Assembly: GCF_003704095.1 (NCBI RefSeq)
Contig: NW_020844822.1
Location: 124,001 to 188,000, forward strand
Length of the DNA: 64,000 nucleotides
Direction of reading: 5' to 3'
Source: Pocillopora damicornis
Taxonomy: Eukaryota
The notes under the pieces are model-generated. The model had not been told where the DNA came from and searched no databases. It saw only the letters and a list, made by a program, of their open reading frames with translations. How positions within the stretch are numbered: the stretch's first letter is position 1; each line of letters starts with the position of its first letter. The translations under genes were made by a program, and so were the position numbers. Shown here in pieces: positions 24,603 through 33,424 of this stretch.

Positions 24603-24800
24603 TCAAGGTGTTGCCTGCCTTCTTTTCCAAATGGTGGCATGTGCTACAGACCACTGGTTTTCACAAGCATTTTCTCTGATGAGGAAAGGCATTAGCTTAT
24701 CTTCAATCAGCTCAAAATCTGGACCCAGGTAACTCTTCAAATTGTCAAATCCTGTGACAATCTTTCCATCTGCATCTTTATAGCCACCAAGCCAAAGACT
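24603..24800 (-). CDS. Terminal exon of the OvoA-like methyltransferase (diverged copy)
   Basis: Follows a pyrimidine tract and AG. Translates SLWLGGYKDADGKIVTGFDNLKSYLGPDFELIEDKLMPFLIRENACENQWSVAHATIWKRRQATP*, matching the WLGG...PFxIRE.RK.Q.....T.W C-terminus of the family. Not in the ORF track. Confidence 0.8.
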   Translation of the reverse strand, partial: SLWLGGYKDADGKIVTGFDNLKSYLGPDFELIEDKLMPFLIRENACENQWSVAHATIWKRRQATP

Positions 24801-25493
24801 CTATACTCACAAAAAAAGAAAAAAGTCGACGTATCAAGATACCTGTGCTCAGTCATGTTCAGGGTTGTAATTAGAAGTCAGTAGTTTGAGTAAACCTGCC
24901 AGCTGAAGCTATCAGACCATTTTGCACTGGCTCAAAGGCAGAAAATAAGTACTATCTGAACTAATTCTAACATCAATATCTGGCTGAAAAATAAGTTACT
25001 CAAATATTATCCTGAATGCTTGAAATCACATTCCCCAGACCCTCCTAGGAGGGCATGTTGCCGAGCAACATGCCATCTTTACTATGCAAGCATCATTCAA
25101 TTCAGCCACCCTCAGTTCAGTGCATTTTGTAATGACAATCCTGGTTTGTAATCATTCATCCTTCCCATAATGTTATTATTTGACTACAAAGAGCTAGTTT
25201 TGATGTTTCTACAATACATTATGGTTGCAATGTCACAGAAATAATCTACCAGCAGAATTCTCAACAAACCAGCTCCATTACATTCTTTTTCAAGAAAGGA
25301 CAAAAAAAGGAAATTTGACTTATGTTTTTTGGCAACAAAGTAATGATGACCACACTTCTATAAGTGCTTCTGAATCACACTTTGAACTCAAAANNNNNNN
25401 NNNNNNNNNNNNNNNNNNNNNNNNNNNNNNNNNNNNNNNNNNNNNNNNNNNNNNNNNNNNNNNNNNNNNNNNNNNNNNNNNNNNNNNNNNNNN

Positions 25494-25639
25494 TTGACAA
25501 TTTGAAGAGTTACCTGGGTCCAAATTTTGAGCTGATTGAAGATAAGCCAATGCCTTTCTTCATCAGAGAAACTGCTCGTAAAAACCAGTGGACTGTAGCA
25601 CATGCCACCATTTGGAAAAGAAGGCAGGCAACACCTTGA
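25494..25639 (+). CDS. Terminal exon (5'-truncated by gap) of the OvoA-like methyltransferase (consensus-like copy)
   Basis: DNLKSYLGPNFELIEDKPMPFFIRETARKNQWTVAHATIWKRRQATP*; reverse-complement paralog of 24603-24748. Confidence 0.8.
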
Positions 25640-26212
25640 ATCCAAACTCTTAGCAATGTTGTTTTAGGATATCTGGTTGAACTTTAGGTGCAAAAGTAAC
25701 GCAAACGAACTTCGACGAATTTCCTGACTTTTCGTGGCTTTTCGAGGGAATTCGGGTGTCCTTAAAGCTAAGACCTAAGACCCGGAAAACTAAGACCCTG
25801 TTTTTTTTTAGGGAAATCATCAAATTTCAGCTTCCTTTACCTTAAAGTGGTAAAATGAATAAAATAAATGCACTCACACTTAAAAAATAACAATTTAGTT
25901 GTATTTTTTTCCGGTATGGCTAGCCTCTTCCAGACTTTCAGTTTATAGTTGGGGCGCAGCGCGAAAGACTGGGCGCGAGAAAAAAATGTAATAAAAAGCG
26001 CGGCGAGAGGGGGCTACGGGTATGGAAAACGAAACTATTTCCGGTTGTCGCAGTGTGGCGTTACACCGTGTACTAAAGTTTGCGAAAAAACGAACGAAGC
26101 AAAGCAGTGCTTTGTCTACTTTGCAAAACGTTATTTTTCGAAAAGGTGCTTTGCGTTTTTCGTTTTCTTACCTCCGTATTATCACTAGAACGTATTACTT
26201 TGAAGCTACTTA

Positions 26213-29712: not shown

Positions 29713-30689
29713 TTAAAACATTTTCAACCCGATGGAAAGTTTTCTTTCTCGAGGAATTTGTTTGCTGGTTTCTAGCTTCTTGATAATTTCGCCGAACTTT
29801 CGCTTCGAAGCGAAAATTCGACGAAATAGCGCTCTTTGTTCATCAGAAAATTCGCTCAAAAAGCCTCGAATTGTCATTCGAACTTTCGCACGAAATTTCG
29901 AAGAAAGTTCGCGAGAAAAAAAGACGAAATTCGGGCATTTCGCTTGCGTTACTTTTGCACAATACTGTGGTCGATTTCTCACAAAGTTGAATAAATTCAT
30001 GTCACTATCTTAAGAACTACGAAAAATTAGTCTACACTGTCCAAGCTGAAGGAGACTTGTGTCCGAACCTGTGGCAGAAGTCGATGCGTTATATCAGTCA
30101 TATCTAAATTGAAATGTCGGAGAACCTGGAAAAGAAAATATTCTTCAGAGAGAAATGACGCCCCAACGCAACCACCTCCCCAACGTTGTTCTTTTCCTTC
30201 CCGATCACTTACGCTGTCAGTAAACTGTGATAGGGCGTGCCTTTTTTGGCGGATGCGCAATAAAGTAGCAGAGCACGAATCGGCGGCAAGTATTTACCAC
30301 CATTTACTGTTTCGCTCTGTGCCTGAAACAGGCTTAGAAACGCTTTAAACATAGTACATGTATTCAGTTAGCTAGTTAGTCAGAAACATTCAATTGCTTT
30401 ATTGAGATTTCCTAACCCATACCATATCTGTTGTTTTGCTACTTCTAGAGGAAAAAAGTCTCTTAACGTGCCACCAATAAAATATTACTTTCAACTCTTT
30501 TTAGCCATTTTCCATTTCCGTTGCCCCCATTCGCTTAAAAATTCGCTTAAAAATTAGTTCTGGTAGATCGAGTGCACTTGCCCTAAGCGATGACCTGTTC
30601 ACCCGAGCACCAAATCGGAGATCCTGTCTACGTCAGGTCGTTTACTTCGGCGAATTAATCTGTAATACTTCTTCAAGTTTCTACCAATT

Positions 30690-31476
30690 ATGGAGAAAAG
30701 TCTTATGATTGCCTCGGCTAGCGCGCTAGGTGCTTCTGCTCTGACGTTACTGGCTTGTCGTTATCTTTCCAATAGATGCGAAGCGCACGATAACGTGTAT
30801 GAGACAGAAAAATTTTTCGGGGAATATCTTATTTTCCACTTTGGCAAACCAGATGAACTGTTACCATATGGCTTTGGTCCTCATGACTCTCTTGATTTTC
30901 CCAAGCGATGTGCATTGGAGTGTATTAAACATATTGGGGTGAGTTAACAATCGTAAATTTTTCACTGTACAAGTAAAGAATATGCTAATGAACGTAAATT
31001 TTAATTCTATTCCGCAATAATTTGCACGGAATTTCGAATATAAAGTTTAAGGTATGTCAAAGTAATTTGAATTCTGGCCACTGCACGTAGATGAACTCCT
31101 TATTTCCACACTGTAGAATTAAGTGTTTCTCATGTACGGATGGTCCTCTTACAACCTCAGCTTTGGAGGAAAAGACCATAACATCTGACTAAATTTGAAT
31201 TCTTTCTTTATTGTATGTTCGCTAAAAAGTGATTAAACTATTAAATCTCGATCTCTTTAGGATAATGTGCCGAGCATTGCTCTCGACATAGGATGTGCTG
31301 TTGGTCGATCTTCATTTGAATTAGCCAAGAGGTTTGATCAAGTTGTAGGAATTGATTTTTCCCATGGTTTTATTAATGCCTGCAATCAACTCAAGACTTA
31401 TGGAAGATTGGAGTACTCTGTCCAAACTGAAGGAAGTCTTGTGTCTAAACATGTTGCTGAGGTTGATCTTGACATT
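30690..31476 (+). CDS. OvoA C-terminal-like SAM-dependent methyltransferase, copy A, exons 1-2 (30690-30938, 31261-31476)
   Basis: YET.K..GEYLIFHFG, FGPHDSLDFPKRCA and SAM motif I ALDIGCAVGRSSFELA..FDQVVGIDFS, as in the 5-thiohistidine N-methyltransferase domain of OvoA and its stand-alone bacterial homologs. Confidence 0.85.
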
Positions 31477-32637
31477 GTAAGTAAGTCACATTGTACAATG
31501 TTTGTCTCAGTGGGGTTACAAGTGAGAAAAGTCATCTCAACAATGTAGGTGTTTCTACTTTGTATTAGCTGGGGAAATACTAAGATATGATATTGACCAA
31601 TCATAAGATCTGATTGGCTGGATGTTAGTGAAATGATCATTTTACACATAGTACTTAATTTATTTCATTTTAATTTTTTTGTATTGGCACAGCATTGTTG
31701 TTGTTTTTTTTTAGAAGGCGATCAGGGGGGAATGGGGTATAGGAAACGTTAAACTTTGAAAATTTTCAGTAGGTAGCACTTAGGAACCTTTTTCCAGAAT
31801 GTGCACTTGTCCCTTAAAAGTAGGTTCCTTAACCCTTTGATACCAAGAGTGACAAGCATCTAATTTTTCATTACAATATCACCCATGAATAACACATCAT
31901 AATCATAAGAATAAAGGAATTGATCACCAACTAAAGAAGCTCTCGATTATGAGGCAAAGTCTCACATCAGCACCTTTGGAAATGTATGGAGAACAGTAAG
32001 GAGAATATGCATACTGATGTTAGGATATAAAGGGTTAGATAAAGTTGGTAGATGCAAAGGTCACAGGAGCATATTTACCAGCTAGTATCAAAGTGATAAT
32101 TTGTGTTTGTCTTGCTTATTTTCCAAGGAGTAGTTGTGATGTATGTGGTGTGTGACATTAGCTACAACTTTGTATCTTTTTTTNNNNNNNNNNNNNNNNN
32201 NNNNNNNNNNNNNNNNNNNNNNNNNNNNNNNNNNNNNNNNNNNNNNNNNNNNNNNNNNNNNNNNNNNNNNNNNNNNNNNNNNNTCCTTTATTCTTATTAT
32301 TGTAATGTGTTATTGATGGCTGATATTGTAATGAGAAGTCAGATGCTTGTCACTCTTAGGTATCAGAGGGTTAAGGAACCTCCTTTTAAGGGACAATTGC
32401 GCATTCTGGGAAAGGTTCCTAAGTGTTACCTACTGAAAATTTTTAAAGTTTAACATTTCCTGTACCACTATGTGTAAAATGATAACTTCACTAACATCCA
32501 GCCAATCAGATCTTTTGATTGGTCAATATTATACCTTAGTATTTCCCCATCTAATACAAAGTAGAAACACCTACATTGTTGAGATGACTTTTCTCAAACC
32601 CCACTGAAACAAACATTGTACAATGTGACTTACTTAC

Positions 32638-33424
32638 AATGTCAAGATCAACCTCAGCGACATGTTTAGACACAAGACTTCCTTCAGTTTGGACAGAGTA
32701 CTCCAATCTTCCATATGTCTTGAGTTGATTGCAGGCATTTATAAAACCATGGGAAAAATCGATTCCTACAACTTGATCAAATCTCTTGGCTAGTTCAAAA
32801 GAAGATCGACCAACTGCACATCCTATGTCGAGAGCAATGCTCGGCACATTATCCTAGAGATCGAGATTTAATAGTTTAATCACTTTTCAGGGAACATACA
32901 ATAAAGAAAGAATTCAAATTTAGTCAGATGTCATGGTCTGTTCCAGATGTTGTAAGAGAACCATCCGTACAAGAGAAACACTTAATTCTACAGTGTGGAA
33001 ATAAGGAGTTAGTTGCCACACTTCATCCACGTGCAGTGGCCAGAATTCAAATTACTTTGACATACCTTAAACTTTATATTCGAAATTCCTTGCAGATTAT
33101 TGCGGAATAGATTAAAATTTACGTACATCAGCATATTCTTTCCTTGTACAGTGAAAAATTTACGATTGTACTCACCCCAATATGTTTAATACATTCCAAC
33201 GCACATCGCTTGGGAAAATCAAGAGAGTCATGGGGACCAAAGCCATATGGTAACAGTTCATCTGGTTTGCCAAAGTGGAAAATAAGATATTCGCCGATTA
33301 ATTTTTCTGTCTCATACACGTTATCGTGCGCTTCGCGTCTCTTGGAAAGAAAACGACAAGCCAGTAACGTCAGAGCAGAAGCACCTAGCGCGCTAGCCGA
33401 GGCAATCATAAGACTTTTCTCCAT
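32638..33424 (-). CDS. OvoA C-terminal-like SAM-dependent methyltransferase, copy B, exons 1-2 (33424-33176, 32853-32638)
   Basis: Near-identical to copy A in opposite orientation. Exon 2 peptide is identical; exon 1 differs (FLSKRREA/EKLIGEY versus YLSNRCEA/EKFFGEY). Confidence 0.85.

What the first reader, a model, noticed from the sequence alone, without database searches (positions are those of the whole stretch)
24603..33424. Duplicated stand-alone OvoA-type methyltransferase with an N-terminal membrane anchor in an animal genome
Seen: two gene copies encoding only a class I SAM methyltransferase (EYLIFHFG, ALDIGCAVGRSSFELA, VGIDFS, WLGG, PFFIRETARKNQW), preceded by a hydrophobic segment and basic residues (MEKSLMIASASALGASALTLLACRFLSKRR). 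No sulfoxide-synthase (DinB/FGE-sulfatase) coding sequence is visible upstream, and the gene has spliceosomal introns. Established: this domain is the 5-thiohistidine N-methyltransferase at the C-terminus of ovothiol synthase OvoA, which makes monomethylated ovothiol A; stand-alone homologs occur in bacteria. Inference: this is a separate, possibly organelle-anchored histidine/thiohistidine methyltransferase. It is a candidate for additional methylations (ovothiol B/C, or hercynine-like betaines) in coral antioxidant or osmolyte chemistry. I consider it the best candidate for an undescribed system in this window.
Basis: partly seen in the sequence, partly recalled or inferred. Interest (0 to 1): 0.75.

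Follow-up and report, generated by a model that had tools for sequence, protein, structure and literature searches.

The report
Two anchored ovothiol-type methyltransferase genes, scrambled
The coral window holds two neighbouring copies of an old, animal-wide but never-studied gene for a membrane-tethered enzyme related to the one that finishes the antioxidant ovothiol, and the copies look scrambled only because a piece of the assembly is turned round.

Summary
The quoted motifs are all present, with GT-AG introns, and no sulfoxide-synthase part lies upstream. Neither copy is complete: 69 residues of each are missing at two 100-N gaps. The exons of each copy lie on opposite strands.

Public Pocillopora proteins and transcript-derived proteins pair the exons in a way that fits only if block 25494-32183 is inverted. 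That gives two tandem genes on the minus strand.

- **Gene B** is the conserved, expressed ortholog.
- **Gene A** is a Pocillopora paralog with 12-14 derived substitutions. One is Cys at an Arg that is never Cys in 314 relatives. I found no transcripts for A.

The product (289 aa) is a full TIGR04345 member (245 and 230 bits; cut-off 170). Its closest solved relatives are the bacterial stand-alone enzymes OvsM and OvoM. It adds a conserved N-terminal hydrophobic anchor.

The family is inherited vertically across animals and appears in the same phyla that keep OvoA. It is annotated everywhere as "uncharacterized". A canonical OvoA lies on another contig.

The most likely function is imidazole N-methylation of 5-thiohistidine at a membrane surface. 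This is unproven. The ovothiol B/C idea has no support.

An earlier scan note (s1-784444) proposed the same inversion.

The parts
33176..33424 (-). Gene B, exon 1 (83 codons from the ATG at 33424). Encodes the hydrophobic N-terminal segment, the basic flank and the start of the methyltransferase domain.
   Evidence: ORF and GT donor. RNA contig X15 record 15 joins 33175/6 to 32852/3. 99% identical to P0339/P0191.
33425..33489 (-). Gene B 5' UTR, with an in-frame TAA 27 nt before the ATG. RNA contigs stop matching at 33486 and 33489.
   Evidence: No AG acceptor at that point.
32638..32853 (-). Gene B, exon 2 (72 codons). SAM-binding motif I and the post-I region.
   Evidence: TIGR04345 positions 45-105, E 1.6e-22. 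RNA contigs X15 record 15 and X17 record 21 cover it.
25494..25639 (+). Gene B, last exon. Only the final 47 codons plus the stop are present; the start is cut off by the gap. It lies on the opposite strand to B's exons 1-2 as assembled.
   Evidence: 100% identical to the C-terminus of P0191 and P0339. TIGR04345 positions 202-242, E 1.9e-7.
30690..30938 (+). Gene A, exon 1 (83 codons). Differs from B at K28N, R30C, L42F and I43F.
   Evidence: The exact ORF (P0308) was seen on 83 contigs.
31261..31476 (+). Gene A, exon 2 (72 codons). Protein identical to B; 8 synonymous differences.
24603..24800 (-). Gene A, last exon (65 codons plus stop). Holds WLGG and the altered strand IRENACENQW. It lies on the opposite strand to A's exons 1-2 as assembled.
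   Evidence: Matches the C-terminus of the A-type P. verrucosa protein P0340. TIGR04345 E 2.5e-4.
25394..25493 (.). 100-N gap. One breakpoint of the mis-oriented block; hides the middle of gene A (in the flipped reading) and cuts the start of B's last exon.
   Evidence: Centre of inverted repeat I3.
32184..32283 (.). 100-N gap. The other breakpoint of the mis-oriented block; centre of the exon 1-2 palindrome.
   Evidence: No DNA contig bridges it.
25494..32183 (.). Block that must be inverted for both genes to become colinear. It then reads as tandem genes B then A on the minus strand.
Evidence: Exon-type pairing in P0339, P0340 and P0191.
31846..32042 (.). High-copy repeat in intron 2 beside the gap. 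The matching arm is at 32284-32357. Probable cause of the assembly break.
   Evidence: Word depth 4878 to 171862 in all four runs. Inverted repeat I10.
23516..24602 (-). 3' flank of gene A, duplicated with the 3' flank of gene B (25640-27439).
   Evidence: Inverted repeats I3, I5, I6, I7 and I13.

Best explanation
**The locus.** The window (a Pocillopora damicornis scaffold) carries two tandem paralogous genes for a 289-aa protein. The protein is an N-terminal signal-anchor helix followed by a complete TIGR04345 (OvoA-C-terminal / OvoM / OvsM-type) class I SAM methyltransferase domain. Block 25494-32183, bounded by two 100-N gaps, is mis-oriented in the assembly. The middle 69 codons of both genes fall in those gaps.

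**The two genes.** Gene B is the conserved, expressed ortholog of a single-copy gene inherited vertically across Metazoa. Gene A is a Pocillopora-lineage duplicate. It keeps its SAM-binding exon under purifying selection, but it has replaced residues in the basic flank of the anchor and in the conserved C-terminal strand.

**Function (inferred).** The helix tethers the enzyme to an ER or mitochondrial outer membrane with the catalytic domain in the cytosol. There it transfers a methyl group from SAM to the imidazole N-pi of 5-thiohistidine, or a close analogue, acting in trans alongside OvoA and a C-S lyase.

**What is shown and what is inferred.**
- Shown: gene structure, paralogy, family membership, expression of B, and the phyletic spread.
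- Inferred: membrane topology, substrate, and the role of A.
For: **Structure of the locus**
- Exons, splice sites and inverted repeats.
- One RNA contig joins B exon 1 to exon 2. Another runs 1209 nt past exon 2 into sequence absent from the laid stretch.
- P. verrucosa has two 289-aa proteins on one 25.7-Mb contig. P0339 combines the B-type N-terminus with the B-type C-terminus; P0340 combines the A-type with the A-type.
- All 8 transcript-derived 284-aa proteins are B-type throughout.
- The pieces that belong together therefore sit on opposite strands in the window, and both breaks are at N gaps.
- The window contig is 257,488 bp, the same length as the contig carrying the truncated P. damicornis models XP_027041137.1 and RMX48184.1. 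Those models read into the window's own intron.

**Family membership**
- TIGR04345: P0339 244.7 bits, P0340 229.8, P0191 244.2, against a cut-off of 170.
- PDB: OvsM 9bxh E 1.2e-66, OvoA 8khq 5.4e-55, OvoM 9bxl 1.2e-52, each over about 250 residues.

**Stand-alone status**
- In-frame TAA in the 5' UTR.
- No FGE-sulfatase or ovoA_Nterm match on C1457. The canonical OvoA is on C1232.

**Anchor**
- A 19-aa window with Kyte-Doolittle mean 1.85, followed by R/K residues.
- 96 of 124 family members have such a segment with mean at least 1.0.

**Vertical inheritance**
- 27 metazoan rows plus 2 unnamed rows form one starred clade whose branching follows animal phylogeny.
- The 49 named animal entries come from phyla listed as OvoA holders. 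None is from arthropods, nematodes or bony vertebrates (PMC4768315 passages).

**Asymmetry of the paralogs**
- Exon 2 has 8 synonymous and 0 nonsynonymous differences. The last exon has 0 and 7.
- In the tree, B has an end branch of 0 and A of 0.042.
- At position 270, Arg occurs in 301 of 314 relatives and Cys in 0.
Against: **Function**
- There is no biochemical datum for any eukaryotic member.
- Of five verrucomicrobial genomes carrying the closest bacterial stand-alone homologs, only one has an OvoA above cut-off. Two have only weak hits and one has none. The clade is therefore not tied to OvoA everywhere.
- Animal OvoA already carries its own methyltransferase domain. Sea-urchin SAM-site residues are reported as conserved (PMC4768315 passages), so a second N-pi methylase looks redundant.
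- The best PDB match is the selenium enzyme OvsM, not OvoM.

**Anchor and completeness**
- The anchor rests on hydropathy and charge alone. No dedicated predictor was run and there is no localisation data.
- The middle 69 residues are in neither gene in this assembly. Intactness in this individual is inferred from RNA contigs and from other species.

**Gene A and the inversion**
- Gene A has no RNA support in the two runs laid. DNA run X2 has zero depth over 30861-31845.
- No read or contig physically links the pieces across the gaps. The inversion is inferred.
- My tree lacks canonical metazoan OvoA C-termini, OvoM and OvsM.
Confidence: 0.55

Rival explanations
1. The enzyme is an N-alpha methyltransferase that converts ovothiol A to ovothiol B/C, or makes hercynine-like betaines.
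For: The N-alpha methyltransferase for ovothiol B/C is stated to be unknown (PMC12631010 passages). An animal that already has a methyltransferase domain in OvoA would have a use for a second, different activity. The family occurs in echinoderms and bivalves, groups in which B/C have been reported (PMC8433421 passage).
Against: The whole domain matches, end to end, the profile built on N-pi methylases. Its closest solved relatives (OvsM, OvoM, OvoA) are all named imidazole N-methyltransferases. OvsM makes a single N-pi methylation. At E 1e-10 or better the only NCBIfam match was TIGR04345. The family is spread over ten animal groups, whereas ovothiol B is reported so far only from clams and diatoms and ovothiol C from two sea-urchin species (PMC8433421 passage).
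Confidence: 0.1
2. It is an animal OvsM: a 5-selenohistidine N-methyltransferase that makes ovoselenol.
For: The best PDB match is OvsM: 228 bits, against 190 for OvoA and 182 for OvoM.
Against: Only one sulfoxide/selenoxide-synthase-type gene was found in the genome, the OvoA on C1232. The other FGE-sulfatase matches, on C1379 and C2777, were not followed up. The bacterial ovs pathway needs OvsA plus SenB/SenC, and I did not look for or find these. A score difference of 40 bits may only reflect evolutionary rate.
Confidence: 0.07
3. It acts on another substrate unrelated to ovothiol, such as another imidazole, a thiol, a peptide or a protein histidine. The match with OvoA's distribution would then be coincidental marine-invertebrate retention.
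For: Three of five bacterial genomes with close stand-alone homologs lack a recognisable OvoA, including one isolate genome. Neighbouring genes in three loci are unrelated to ovothiol.
Against: Scores are far above the equivalog cut-off. The phyletic pattern matches OvoA's.
Confidence: 0.2
4. The palindromic exon order is real. The window would then hold broken, rearranged gene fragments (pseudogenes) rather than two intact tandem genes.
For: The assembly shows it so. No contig in four runs crosses either gap. The middle exons matched nowhere in the assembly.
Against: Abundant RNA contigs continue from exon 2 into further sequence. The transcript-derived proteins are full length and use the plus-strand last exon together with the minus-strand exons 1-2. 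Both breakpoints are exactly at N gaps flanked by a high-copy repeat. P. verrucosa has two intact 289-aa genes.
Confidence: 0.06
5. Gene A is a decaying, silent duplicate rather than a working paralog.
For: No RNA depth in X15, and only a low-depth mixed contig in X17. 0 of 8 transcript-derived proteins are A-type. A has Cys at an Arg kept in 301 of 314 relatives, and Glu at a Lys/Arg kept in 306 of 314. Its last exon has 7 nonsynonymous and 0 synonymous differences.
Against: There is no stop or frameshift in the exons present. A is intact at 289 aa in P. verrucosa with the same substitutions. Exon 2 has 8 synonymous and 0 nonsynonymous differences. It still scores 229.8 bits.
Confidence: 0.45

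Closest known systems
OvsM, 5-selenohistidine N-methyltransferase of the ovoselenol pathway (PDB 9bxh; Halomonas utahensis, PMC11030361)
   Same: Stand-alone TIGR04345-type class I SAM methyltransferase. Aligns over residues 27-279 of the coral protein at E 1.2e-66. Shares motif I, SPY[ST]W, W[LI]GG and the IRET.RK.Q strand.
   Different: Bacterial, 267 aa, with no hydrophobic N-terminal anchor. Works with OvsA and SenB/SenC, which I did not look for in the coral. Its substrate is a selenol.
OvoM, 5-thiohistidine N-methyltransferase (PDB 9bxl). Known to me only from the PDB molecule name and from the reference entry for Ireland et al. 2025 in PMC13603875; the paper is not held.
   Same: A stand-alone enzyme for the last ovothiol A step. 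E 1.2e-52 over about 250 residues.
   Different: Bacterial and soluble. The Chlamydomonas preprint cites Ireland et al. 2025 for OvoA homologs that lack the methyltransferase domain (passage). The coral OvoA instead still has a methyltransferase-like C-terminal region.
C-terminal methyltransferase domain of OvoA (PDB 8khq, OvoATh2; TIGR04345)
   Same: The same domain end to end (E 5.4e-55; 245 bits).
   Different: Not fused to a sulfoxide synthase. Fused bacterial C-termini form a separate 99* clade in my tree. The coral's own OvoA methyltransferase exon scores only 42.5 bits and has an intron at a different place.
Stand-alone TIGR04345 proteins of Verrucomicrobiota (about 250 aa)
   Same: 42-54% identity to the family alignment's first row, the Pocillopora protein, over about residues 35-285. 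72 of the best 80 bacterial loci are stand-alone ORFs of at most 330 aa.
   Different: No N-terminal extension. Only 1 of 5 genomes checked has an OvoA. Function untested.

Membership tests
TIGR04345 ovoA_Cterm (putative 4-mercaptohistidine N1-methyltransferase) | Whole-domain profile score above the curated cut-off of 170 bits | tested here: met
   P0339 244.7 bits, P0340 229.8 and P0191 244.2, over profile positions 1-242. The window's exons alone give 80.2 bits plus 30.9 or 20.7, because 69 residues are missing.
TIGR04345 ovoA_Cterm | Class I SAM-binding motif I and the acidic residue after strand 2 | tested here: met
   ALDIGCAVGR and VGIDFS are present in both exon 2 copies. These columns are invariant in alignment A4.
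TIGR04345 ovoA_Cterm | Conserved C-terminal strand IRE[TH]xRKxQ | tested here: met
   Met in gene B. Not met in gene A, which reads N, C and E at positions 268, 270 and 271. Cys occurs in 0 of 314 relatives.
OvoA (bifunctional ovothiol synthase) | Methyltransferase domain fused behind a DinB/FGE-type sulfoxide synthase | tested here: not met
   In-frame TAA in the 5' UTR, which is covered by RNA contigs. No PF03781 or TIGR04344 match on contig C1457.
OvoM / OvsM stand-alone N-methyltransferases | Stand-alone protein alignable over the full length to the solved enzymes | tested here: met
   E 1.2e-66 (OvsM) and 1.2e-52 (OvoM) over about 250 residues.
OvoM / OvsM stand-alone N-methyltransferases | Partner synthase that lacks its own methyltransferase domain (OvsA, or a truncated OvoA) | tested here: not met
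   The only synthase found, on C1232, is followed by methyltransferase-like exons. No second ovoA_Nterm-type gene was found.
OvoM / OvsM stand-alone N-methyltransferases | N-pi methylation of 5-thio- or 5-selenohistidine | not testable with these tools
   Needs an enzyme assay.
OvsM (ovoselenol pathway) | Co-occurrence with the selenosugar genes senB/senC | not tested
   I did not search the coral genome for senB/senC.
Histidine N-alpha methyltransferases (EgtD / EanA type) | Sequence membership | tested here: not met
   At E 1e-10 or better, the only NCBIfam match for P0339, P0340, P0213, P0228 and P0191 was TIGR04345.
Signal-anchored membrane protein (N-terminal helix, cytosolic domain) | A hydrophobic stretch of about 19 aa followed by net positive charge | tested here: inconclusive
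   Kyte-Doolittle mean 1.85 with an R/K flank. 96 of 124 relatives reach at least 1.0 and 30 reach at least 1.6. No dedicated predictor was run and there is no localisation data.

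The most novel reading that the evidence does not exclude
This anchored enzyme, not the methyltransferase domain fused to OvoA, may be the working terminal methylase of thiohistidine metabolism in animals, or a second methylase with its own product. 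It would be positioned on an organelle surface. The hint is that the coral OvoA's own methyltransferase exon has lost the first glycine of motif I and scores poorly. Pocillopora would then have duplicated the gene and retuned one copy, with Cys and Glu replacing a near-universal Arg-Lys pair and with a weakened basic flank on the anchor, toward a different substrate, partner or membrane.
Probability: 0.3. Interest if true: 0.75.

Novelty: new variant of a known kind. Interest (0 to 1): 0.55.

Why it matters
**Why the family matters.** In the ovothiol and ovoselenol papers that I opened (call numbers in the full report), the animal pathway is OvoA plus a lyase, and I saw no separate animal methyltransferase mentioned. 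This family has three notable properties:
- It is as old as animals.
- It is kept in the lineages that keep OvoA.
- It is closer to the bacterial reference profile than the coral OvoA's own methyltransferase exon is.

If it acts on thiohistidines, three open questions become directly testable with one recombinant protein and one knock-out in Nematostella:
- which enzyme methylates in vivo;
- where in the cell it does so;
- how ovothiol variants arise.

**Practical consequences.**
- The public P. damicornis gene models here are truncated artefacts (173 and 178 aa) caused by a mis-oriented, gap-bounded block.
- The P. meandrina model is a mosaic of the two paralogs.

Tried and rejected
**Led nowhere**

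I could not read the gene in gap-free coral contigs.
2. The word search with exon 1 returned only exon-sized ORFs.
3. I could not obtain canonical metazoan OvoA proteins. A profile of P0113 plus coral OvoA exon rows returned 4634 hits. The best 120 that were listed carried only bacterial or bdelloid-rotifer source names, or no name at all. The tree therefore lacks animal OvoA C-termini.
5. The paper with the OvsM and OvoM structures (Ireland et al. 2025) is not held. I could not map substrate-contact residues.
6. Two literature searches were swamped by unrelated words.
7. tblastn of four family proteins against 16 kb downstream of the coral OvoA motif-I exon found nothing further. The later exons were seen only by eye in open frames.
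8. I did not run structure prediction. Sequence identity to solved structures already fixes the fold, and the tool returns no coordinates for measuring contacts.

**Considered and rejected**

- *N-terminal extension or fusion to OvoA.* Rejected because of the in-frame stop and the absence of a synthase on the contig.
- *Copy A as a mere assembly duplicate or haplotig.* Rejected because its exact exon-1 ORF is on 83 contigs, and P. verrucosa has it as a separate locus.
- *Spliced-leader or upstream coding exon at 33486/33489.* There is no acceptor, and the two runs show different loose letters. This is left unexplained.

**Supplementary files.** I did not open any. Those that may bear on these claims:
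- PMC11030361, Supplementary Fig. 1: OvsM compared with the OvoA C-terminus.
- PMC4768315, supplementary alignment: animal OvoA methyltransferase residues.
- PMC12631010, Table S1: truncated OvoA homologs.

**My own knowledge, from no call:**
- The assignment of genera to phyla.
- The positive-inside, P450 and Tom20 analogies.

Full report
**1. What is in the sequence**

Region 24603-33424 holds two copies each of three coding pieces.

| Piece | Plus-strand copy | Minus-strand copy | Notes |
|---|---|---|---|
| Exon 1 (83 codons, from an ATG) | 30690-30938 | 33176-33424 | |
| Exon 2 (72 codons) | 31261-31476 | 32638-32853 | |
| Last exon | 25494-25639 | about 24603-24800 | The plus copy is cut by a gap, leaving 47 codons plus the stop. 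The minus copy has 65 codons plus the stop and holds the only WLGG. |

- Donors are GT and acceptors are AG.
- Against NCBIfam, exon 2 matches TIGR04345 (ovoA_Cterm) positions 45-105 at E 1.6e-22. The last exons match positions 202-242 at 1.9e-7 and 2.5e-4. Exon 1 alone matches nothing.
- The part between (profile positions about 106-183) is not in the window. A search of the whole 234-Mb assembly with the profile found it nowhere, and so did a search with a full-length relative (residues 157-223 unmatched).

**2. The gaps**

- The copies form two inverted repeats. The arms 30467-31918 / 32284-33636 and 23516-24748 / 25494-27439 are 81-96% complementary.
- Each repeat is centred on a 100-N gap: 32184-32283 and 25394-25493.
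- The two sides of each gap are on opposite strands of the gene, so they are not continuous. The gap at 25394-25493 removes the start of one last exon.
- The other gaps named by the scan (26682-27300), and those at 27462-28299, lie in 3' flank or intergenic DNA.
- A high-copy repeat abuts the 32184 gap. Its word depth is 4,878 to 171,862 in all four runs at 31846-32042. This is a likely reason for the assembly break.

**3. Which pieces belong together**

The two copies differ. I call the plus-strand exon 1-2 copy A and the minus-strand copy B.

| Piece compared | Synonymous differences | Nonsynonymous differences |
|---|---|---|
| Exon 1 | 4 | 5 |
| Exon 2 | 8 | 0 |
| 47 shared codons of the last exon | 0 | 7 |
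| Overall dN/dS | 0.27 | |

(All.)

An exact-sequence look-up placed the window's ORFs in clusters with named proteins:
- Pocillopora damicornis XP_027041137.1 (178 aa) and RMX48184.1 (173 aa);
- P. verrucosa XP_058957357.1 (P0339) and XP_058957386.1 (P0340), both 289 aa and on one 25.7-Mb contig;
- P. meandrina CAH3145096.1 (P0341).

The alignment shows how the types combine:
- P0339 joins the B-type exon 1 signature with the plus-strand last-exon type.
- P0340 joins the A-type exon 1 signature with the minus-strand last-exon type.
- The transcript-derived protein P0191 (284 aa, from contigs of at most 1.4 kb) is 99%, 100% and 100% identical to B exon 1, exon 2 and the plus-strand last exon. 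It is only 88% identical to the minus-strand last exon.

In the window, therefore, each gene's front and back lie on opposite strands. Both become colinear only if block 25494-32183 is inverted. The locus then reads, on the minus strand: B exons 1-2, gap, B last exon, about 5 kb, A exons 1-2, gap, A last exon.

I derived this before seeing that another first-stage note (s1-784444) proposes the same flip. The pairing test above is my check of it. No read physically links the pieces, so the inversion is inferred, not seen.

The two P. damicornis models are A-type exons 1-2 that run on into the window's own intron. Their contig length of 257,488 equals that of the window's contig. This identifies the assembly and shows that the public models are truncated by the gap.

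**4. Expression and the start of the protein**

I laid two RNA and two DNA runs on 28300-34200.

- X15 record 15 (708 nt, depth 350) covers B exon 2 and B exon 1 with its 5' UTR, up to 33486. Its joint skips 322 nt with GT..AG ends on the minus strand.
- X17 record 21 (1427 nt) has 218 nt on B exon 2. It then runs 1209 nt into sequence not in the laid stretch. That is enough for the missing codons, the last exon and a 3' UTR. The loose letters shown by the tool continue the frame; I neither searched with them nor quote them.
- The 5' UTR has an in-frame TAA 27 nt before the ATG in both copies, so no upstream coding exon can be joined in frame.
- Beyond 33486 and 33489 the two runs show different loose letters (180 nt and 28 nt), and there is no AG acceptor there. 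I take this as the transcript start plus contig chimeras, but it is unexplained.
- All four runs read T at 33351, giving Tyr25. The window's Phe25 is private to it.
- Copy A had RNA depth 0 in X15, and 1-6 in X17 from a mixed-paralog contig. DNA run X2 had depth 0 across 30861-31845.
- Of the 14 members of P0191's 90% cluster, all 8 transcript-derived 284-aa proteins are B-type at every diagnostic site.
- A is nevertheless real. Its exact exon-1 ORF (P0308) is on 83 contigs and its exon-2 ORF on 34.

**5. What the protein is**

- Full-length Pocillopora proteins match TIGR04345 end to end: 244.7 bits for B-type and 229.8 for A-type, against a cut-off of 170. Pfam sees only generic Methyltransf_11, _12, _23, _25 and _31.
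- Against PDB sequences the best matches are:
  - OvsM, 5-selenohistidine N-methyltransferase (9bxh): 1.2e-66;
  - OvoA of Hydrogenimonas (8khq): 5.4e-55;
  - OvoM, 5-thiohistidine N-methyltransferase (9bxl): 1.2e-52.

  Each aligns over about 250 residues.
- OvsM is described as a stand-alone N-pi methyltransferase that adds one methyl to 5-selenohistidine and does not accept histidine (passages of PMC11030361).
- The OvoM/OvsM structure paper (Ireland et al. 2025) was seen only as a reference entry in PMC13603875 and is not held.

**6. The family in animals**

- The full scan with exon 2 gave 932 hits at E up to 1e-3. Of the 150 listed, only one (P0113, 528 aa) exceeds 400 aa, and it is a fused OvoA fragment.
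- Seven stand-alone representatives of about 300 aa scored 201.7-245.8 bits on TIGR04345.
- A profile search gave 403 hits at E up to 1e-10, of which the best 120 were listed.

By my count, 49 of those 120 carry names of animals:

| Group | Entries |
|---|---|
| Molluscs | 30 |
| Echinoderms | 6 |
| Annelids | 3 |
| Cnidarians | 2 |
| Hemichordates | 2 |
| Tunicates | 2 |
| Brachiopod | 1 |
| Nemertean | 1 |
| Cephalochordate | 1 |
| Chimaera | 1 |

- Three more entries are green algae and three are EukProt entries. The phylum assignments are my own knowledge.
- Sharks appear.
- All are called uncharacterized, "Methyltransferase type 11" or, by JGI, "putative 4-mercaptohistidine N1-methyltransferase".
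- None of the 49 is an arthropod, nematode or bony vertebrate. Those are the lineages reported to have lost OvoA, and the phyla present are the reported OvoA holders (passages of PMC4768315). The 283 unlisted hits were not seen, so absence is not shown.

The tree has 83 rows and was built with the quick method. I used 35 of the 67 stand-alone bacterial ORFs of at most 300 aa (every second one), and 6 fused C-termini.
- The 27 animal rows plus 2 unnamed rows form one starred clade (95).
- Cnidarians (97*), chordates (95*), ambulacrarians (96*) and lophotrochozoans (96*) sit inside it. This is the pattern of vertical descent.
- The fused bacterial C-termini form a separate clade (99*).
- The best 80 bacterial loci are mostly Verrucomicrobiota. 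72 of the 80 are stand-alone ORFs of at most 330 aa and 5 are fused OvoAs.

**7. The anchor**

- Residues 5-23 have a Kyte-Doolittle mean of 1.85 and are followed by R, K, R, R.
- Of 124 family members of 250-350 aa, 96 have a 19-aa N-terminal window at 1.0 or above and 30 at 1.6 or above. In the members with such a segment it is mostly followed by a net charge of +2 to +6.
- Bacterial relatives lack this extension: those columns are all gaps in 72 of 72 and 120 of 120 sequences.
- A moderately hydrophobic N-terminal helix followed by basic residues is what signal-anchored ER and mitochondrial outer-membrane proteins look like, with the bulk of the protein in the cytosol. This is established knowledge that I recall; it was not tested here.
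- I saw a diatom OvoA reported as mitochondrial only as a title in a search listing (PMC9890322).

**8. Gene A**

- All amino-acid differences except Phe25 are derived in A when judged against other corals.
- In the tree, B has an end branch of 0 and A of 0.042.
- A changes two basic residues beside the anchor (K28N, R30C). It also changes the conserved C-terminal strand at three positions, counted across 314 relatives:

| Change in A | Residues seen at that position in 314 relatives |
|---|---|
| T268N | Asn in 2 |
| R270C | Arg in 301, Cys in 0 |
| K271E | Lys in 286, Arg in 20, Glu in 6 |

- In OvoATh2 the aligned strand T690-Q700 forms the dimer interface, and R692 makes a salt bridge to the other monomer (passages of PMC10696552; alignment).
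- Exon 2's 8 synonymous and 0 nonsynonymous differences argue that A was under selection for much of its history. The absence of transcripts argues that it may now be silent. I put the two outcomes near even.

**9. The canonical OvoA**

- Contig C1232 carries nine ovoA_Nterm exon matches on the minus strand, from 148434 to 137676. FGE-sulfatase matches are there too.
- Downstream lies one TIGR04345 match of only 42.5 bits.
- That exon reads E-I-M-C-S-V-G where the family has D-[ILV]-G-C-A-V-G. It is split by an intron inside the FDQ|V.ID stretch, where the stand-alone gene has none.
- Further methyltransferase-like exons were seen only by eye. tblastn found none.
- The two genes are therefore old paralogs. 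The fused domain of the coral OvoA is the more divergent of the two. Whether it is active is unknown.

**10. Function**

*For imidazole N-methylation of 5-thiohistidine:*
- membership of an equivalog-level family;
- three characterised relatives with that chemistry;
- co-distribution with OvoA.

*Against, or limiting:*
- OvoA has its own methyltransferase domain.
- Only 1 of 5 verrucomicrobial genomes with a close stand-alone homolog has an OvoA over cut-off (Pelagicoccus mobilis, 669.7 bits, in a 718-aa frame). One has a 99.7-bit synthase-like gene, two have weak hits and one has none.
- Gene neighbours in three loci are unrelated.

The N-alpha methylase for ovothiol B/C is stated to be unknown (passages of PMC12631010). 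Nothing here favours that activity over ring methylation.

I found no paper describing a eukaryotic stand-alone member. I read passages only in the papers named above.

**11. Verdict**

- The gene is a member of a known enzyme family in a new, anchored, animal-wide form.
- Its function in animals is open and directly testable.
- The spliced model was not searched as one joined sequence.

Noticed in passing
G000:C1232:134400-148434 (minus strand); loci L003, L013, L098: This is the canonical OvoA of this coral. The motif-I exon of its methyltransferase region reads E-I-M-C-S-V-G where the family has D-x-G-C-A-V-G. It scores only 42.5 bits on TIGR04345, and later exons escape tblastn. The fused domain may be degenerate.
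   Followed up: partly
window 31846-32042 and 29482-29875: Very high word depth in all four runs, up to 171,862 and 66,803. These are high-copy repeats, and one sits directly beside the 32184 gap.
   Followed up: no
window 33486-33489: RNA contigs of two runs stop matching here and continue with different letters (180 nt and 28 nt). There is no AG acceptor. This could be the transcript start with contig chimeras, or alternative leaders. Unexplained.
   Followed up: partly
window 30861-31845: DNA run X2 has zero depth over gene A while covering gene B and the flanks. This may be copy-number or lineage variation of the paralog, or simply low coverage.
   Followed up: no
P0341 (Pocillopora meandrina CAH3145096.1): This public model combines a B-type N-terminus with an A-type C-terminus. 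It is either a gene model fused across the tandem paralogs or a product of gene conversion.
   Followed up: no
window 22103-22645 (+): An intron-less 180-aa ORF with an HSP20/alpha-crystallin domain (E 2.3e-20), about 2 kb from the end of gene A.
   Followed up: partly
window 34472-34543 (+): tRNA-Ala (cgc) about 1 kb upstream of gene B.
   Followed up: partly
L071 and L099 (Pelagicoccus mobilis): This bacterium has both a fused OvoA (669.7 bits, 718-aa frame) and a separate stand-alone TIGR04345 gene. That is the same pairing seen in animals.
   Followed up: partly
L019:4744-5364: In a Chthoniobacteraceae genome, a thiopurine S-methyltransferase-like gene (TMPT_Se_Te, 55 bits, below cut-off) directly follows the stand-alone methyltransferase.
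   Followed up: no
window 26774-27439: The 3' flank of gene A (23516-23656) matches twice here, at 26782-26882 and 27301-27439, between short N runs. This looks like redundant pieces in a poorly assembled stretch.
   Followed up: no
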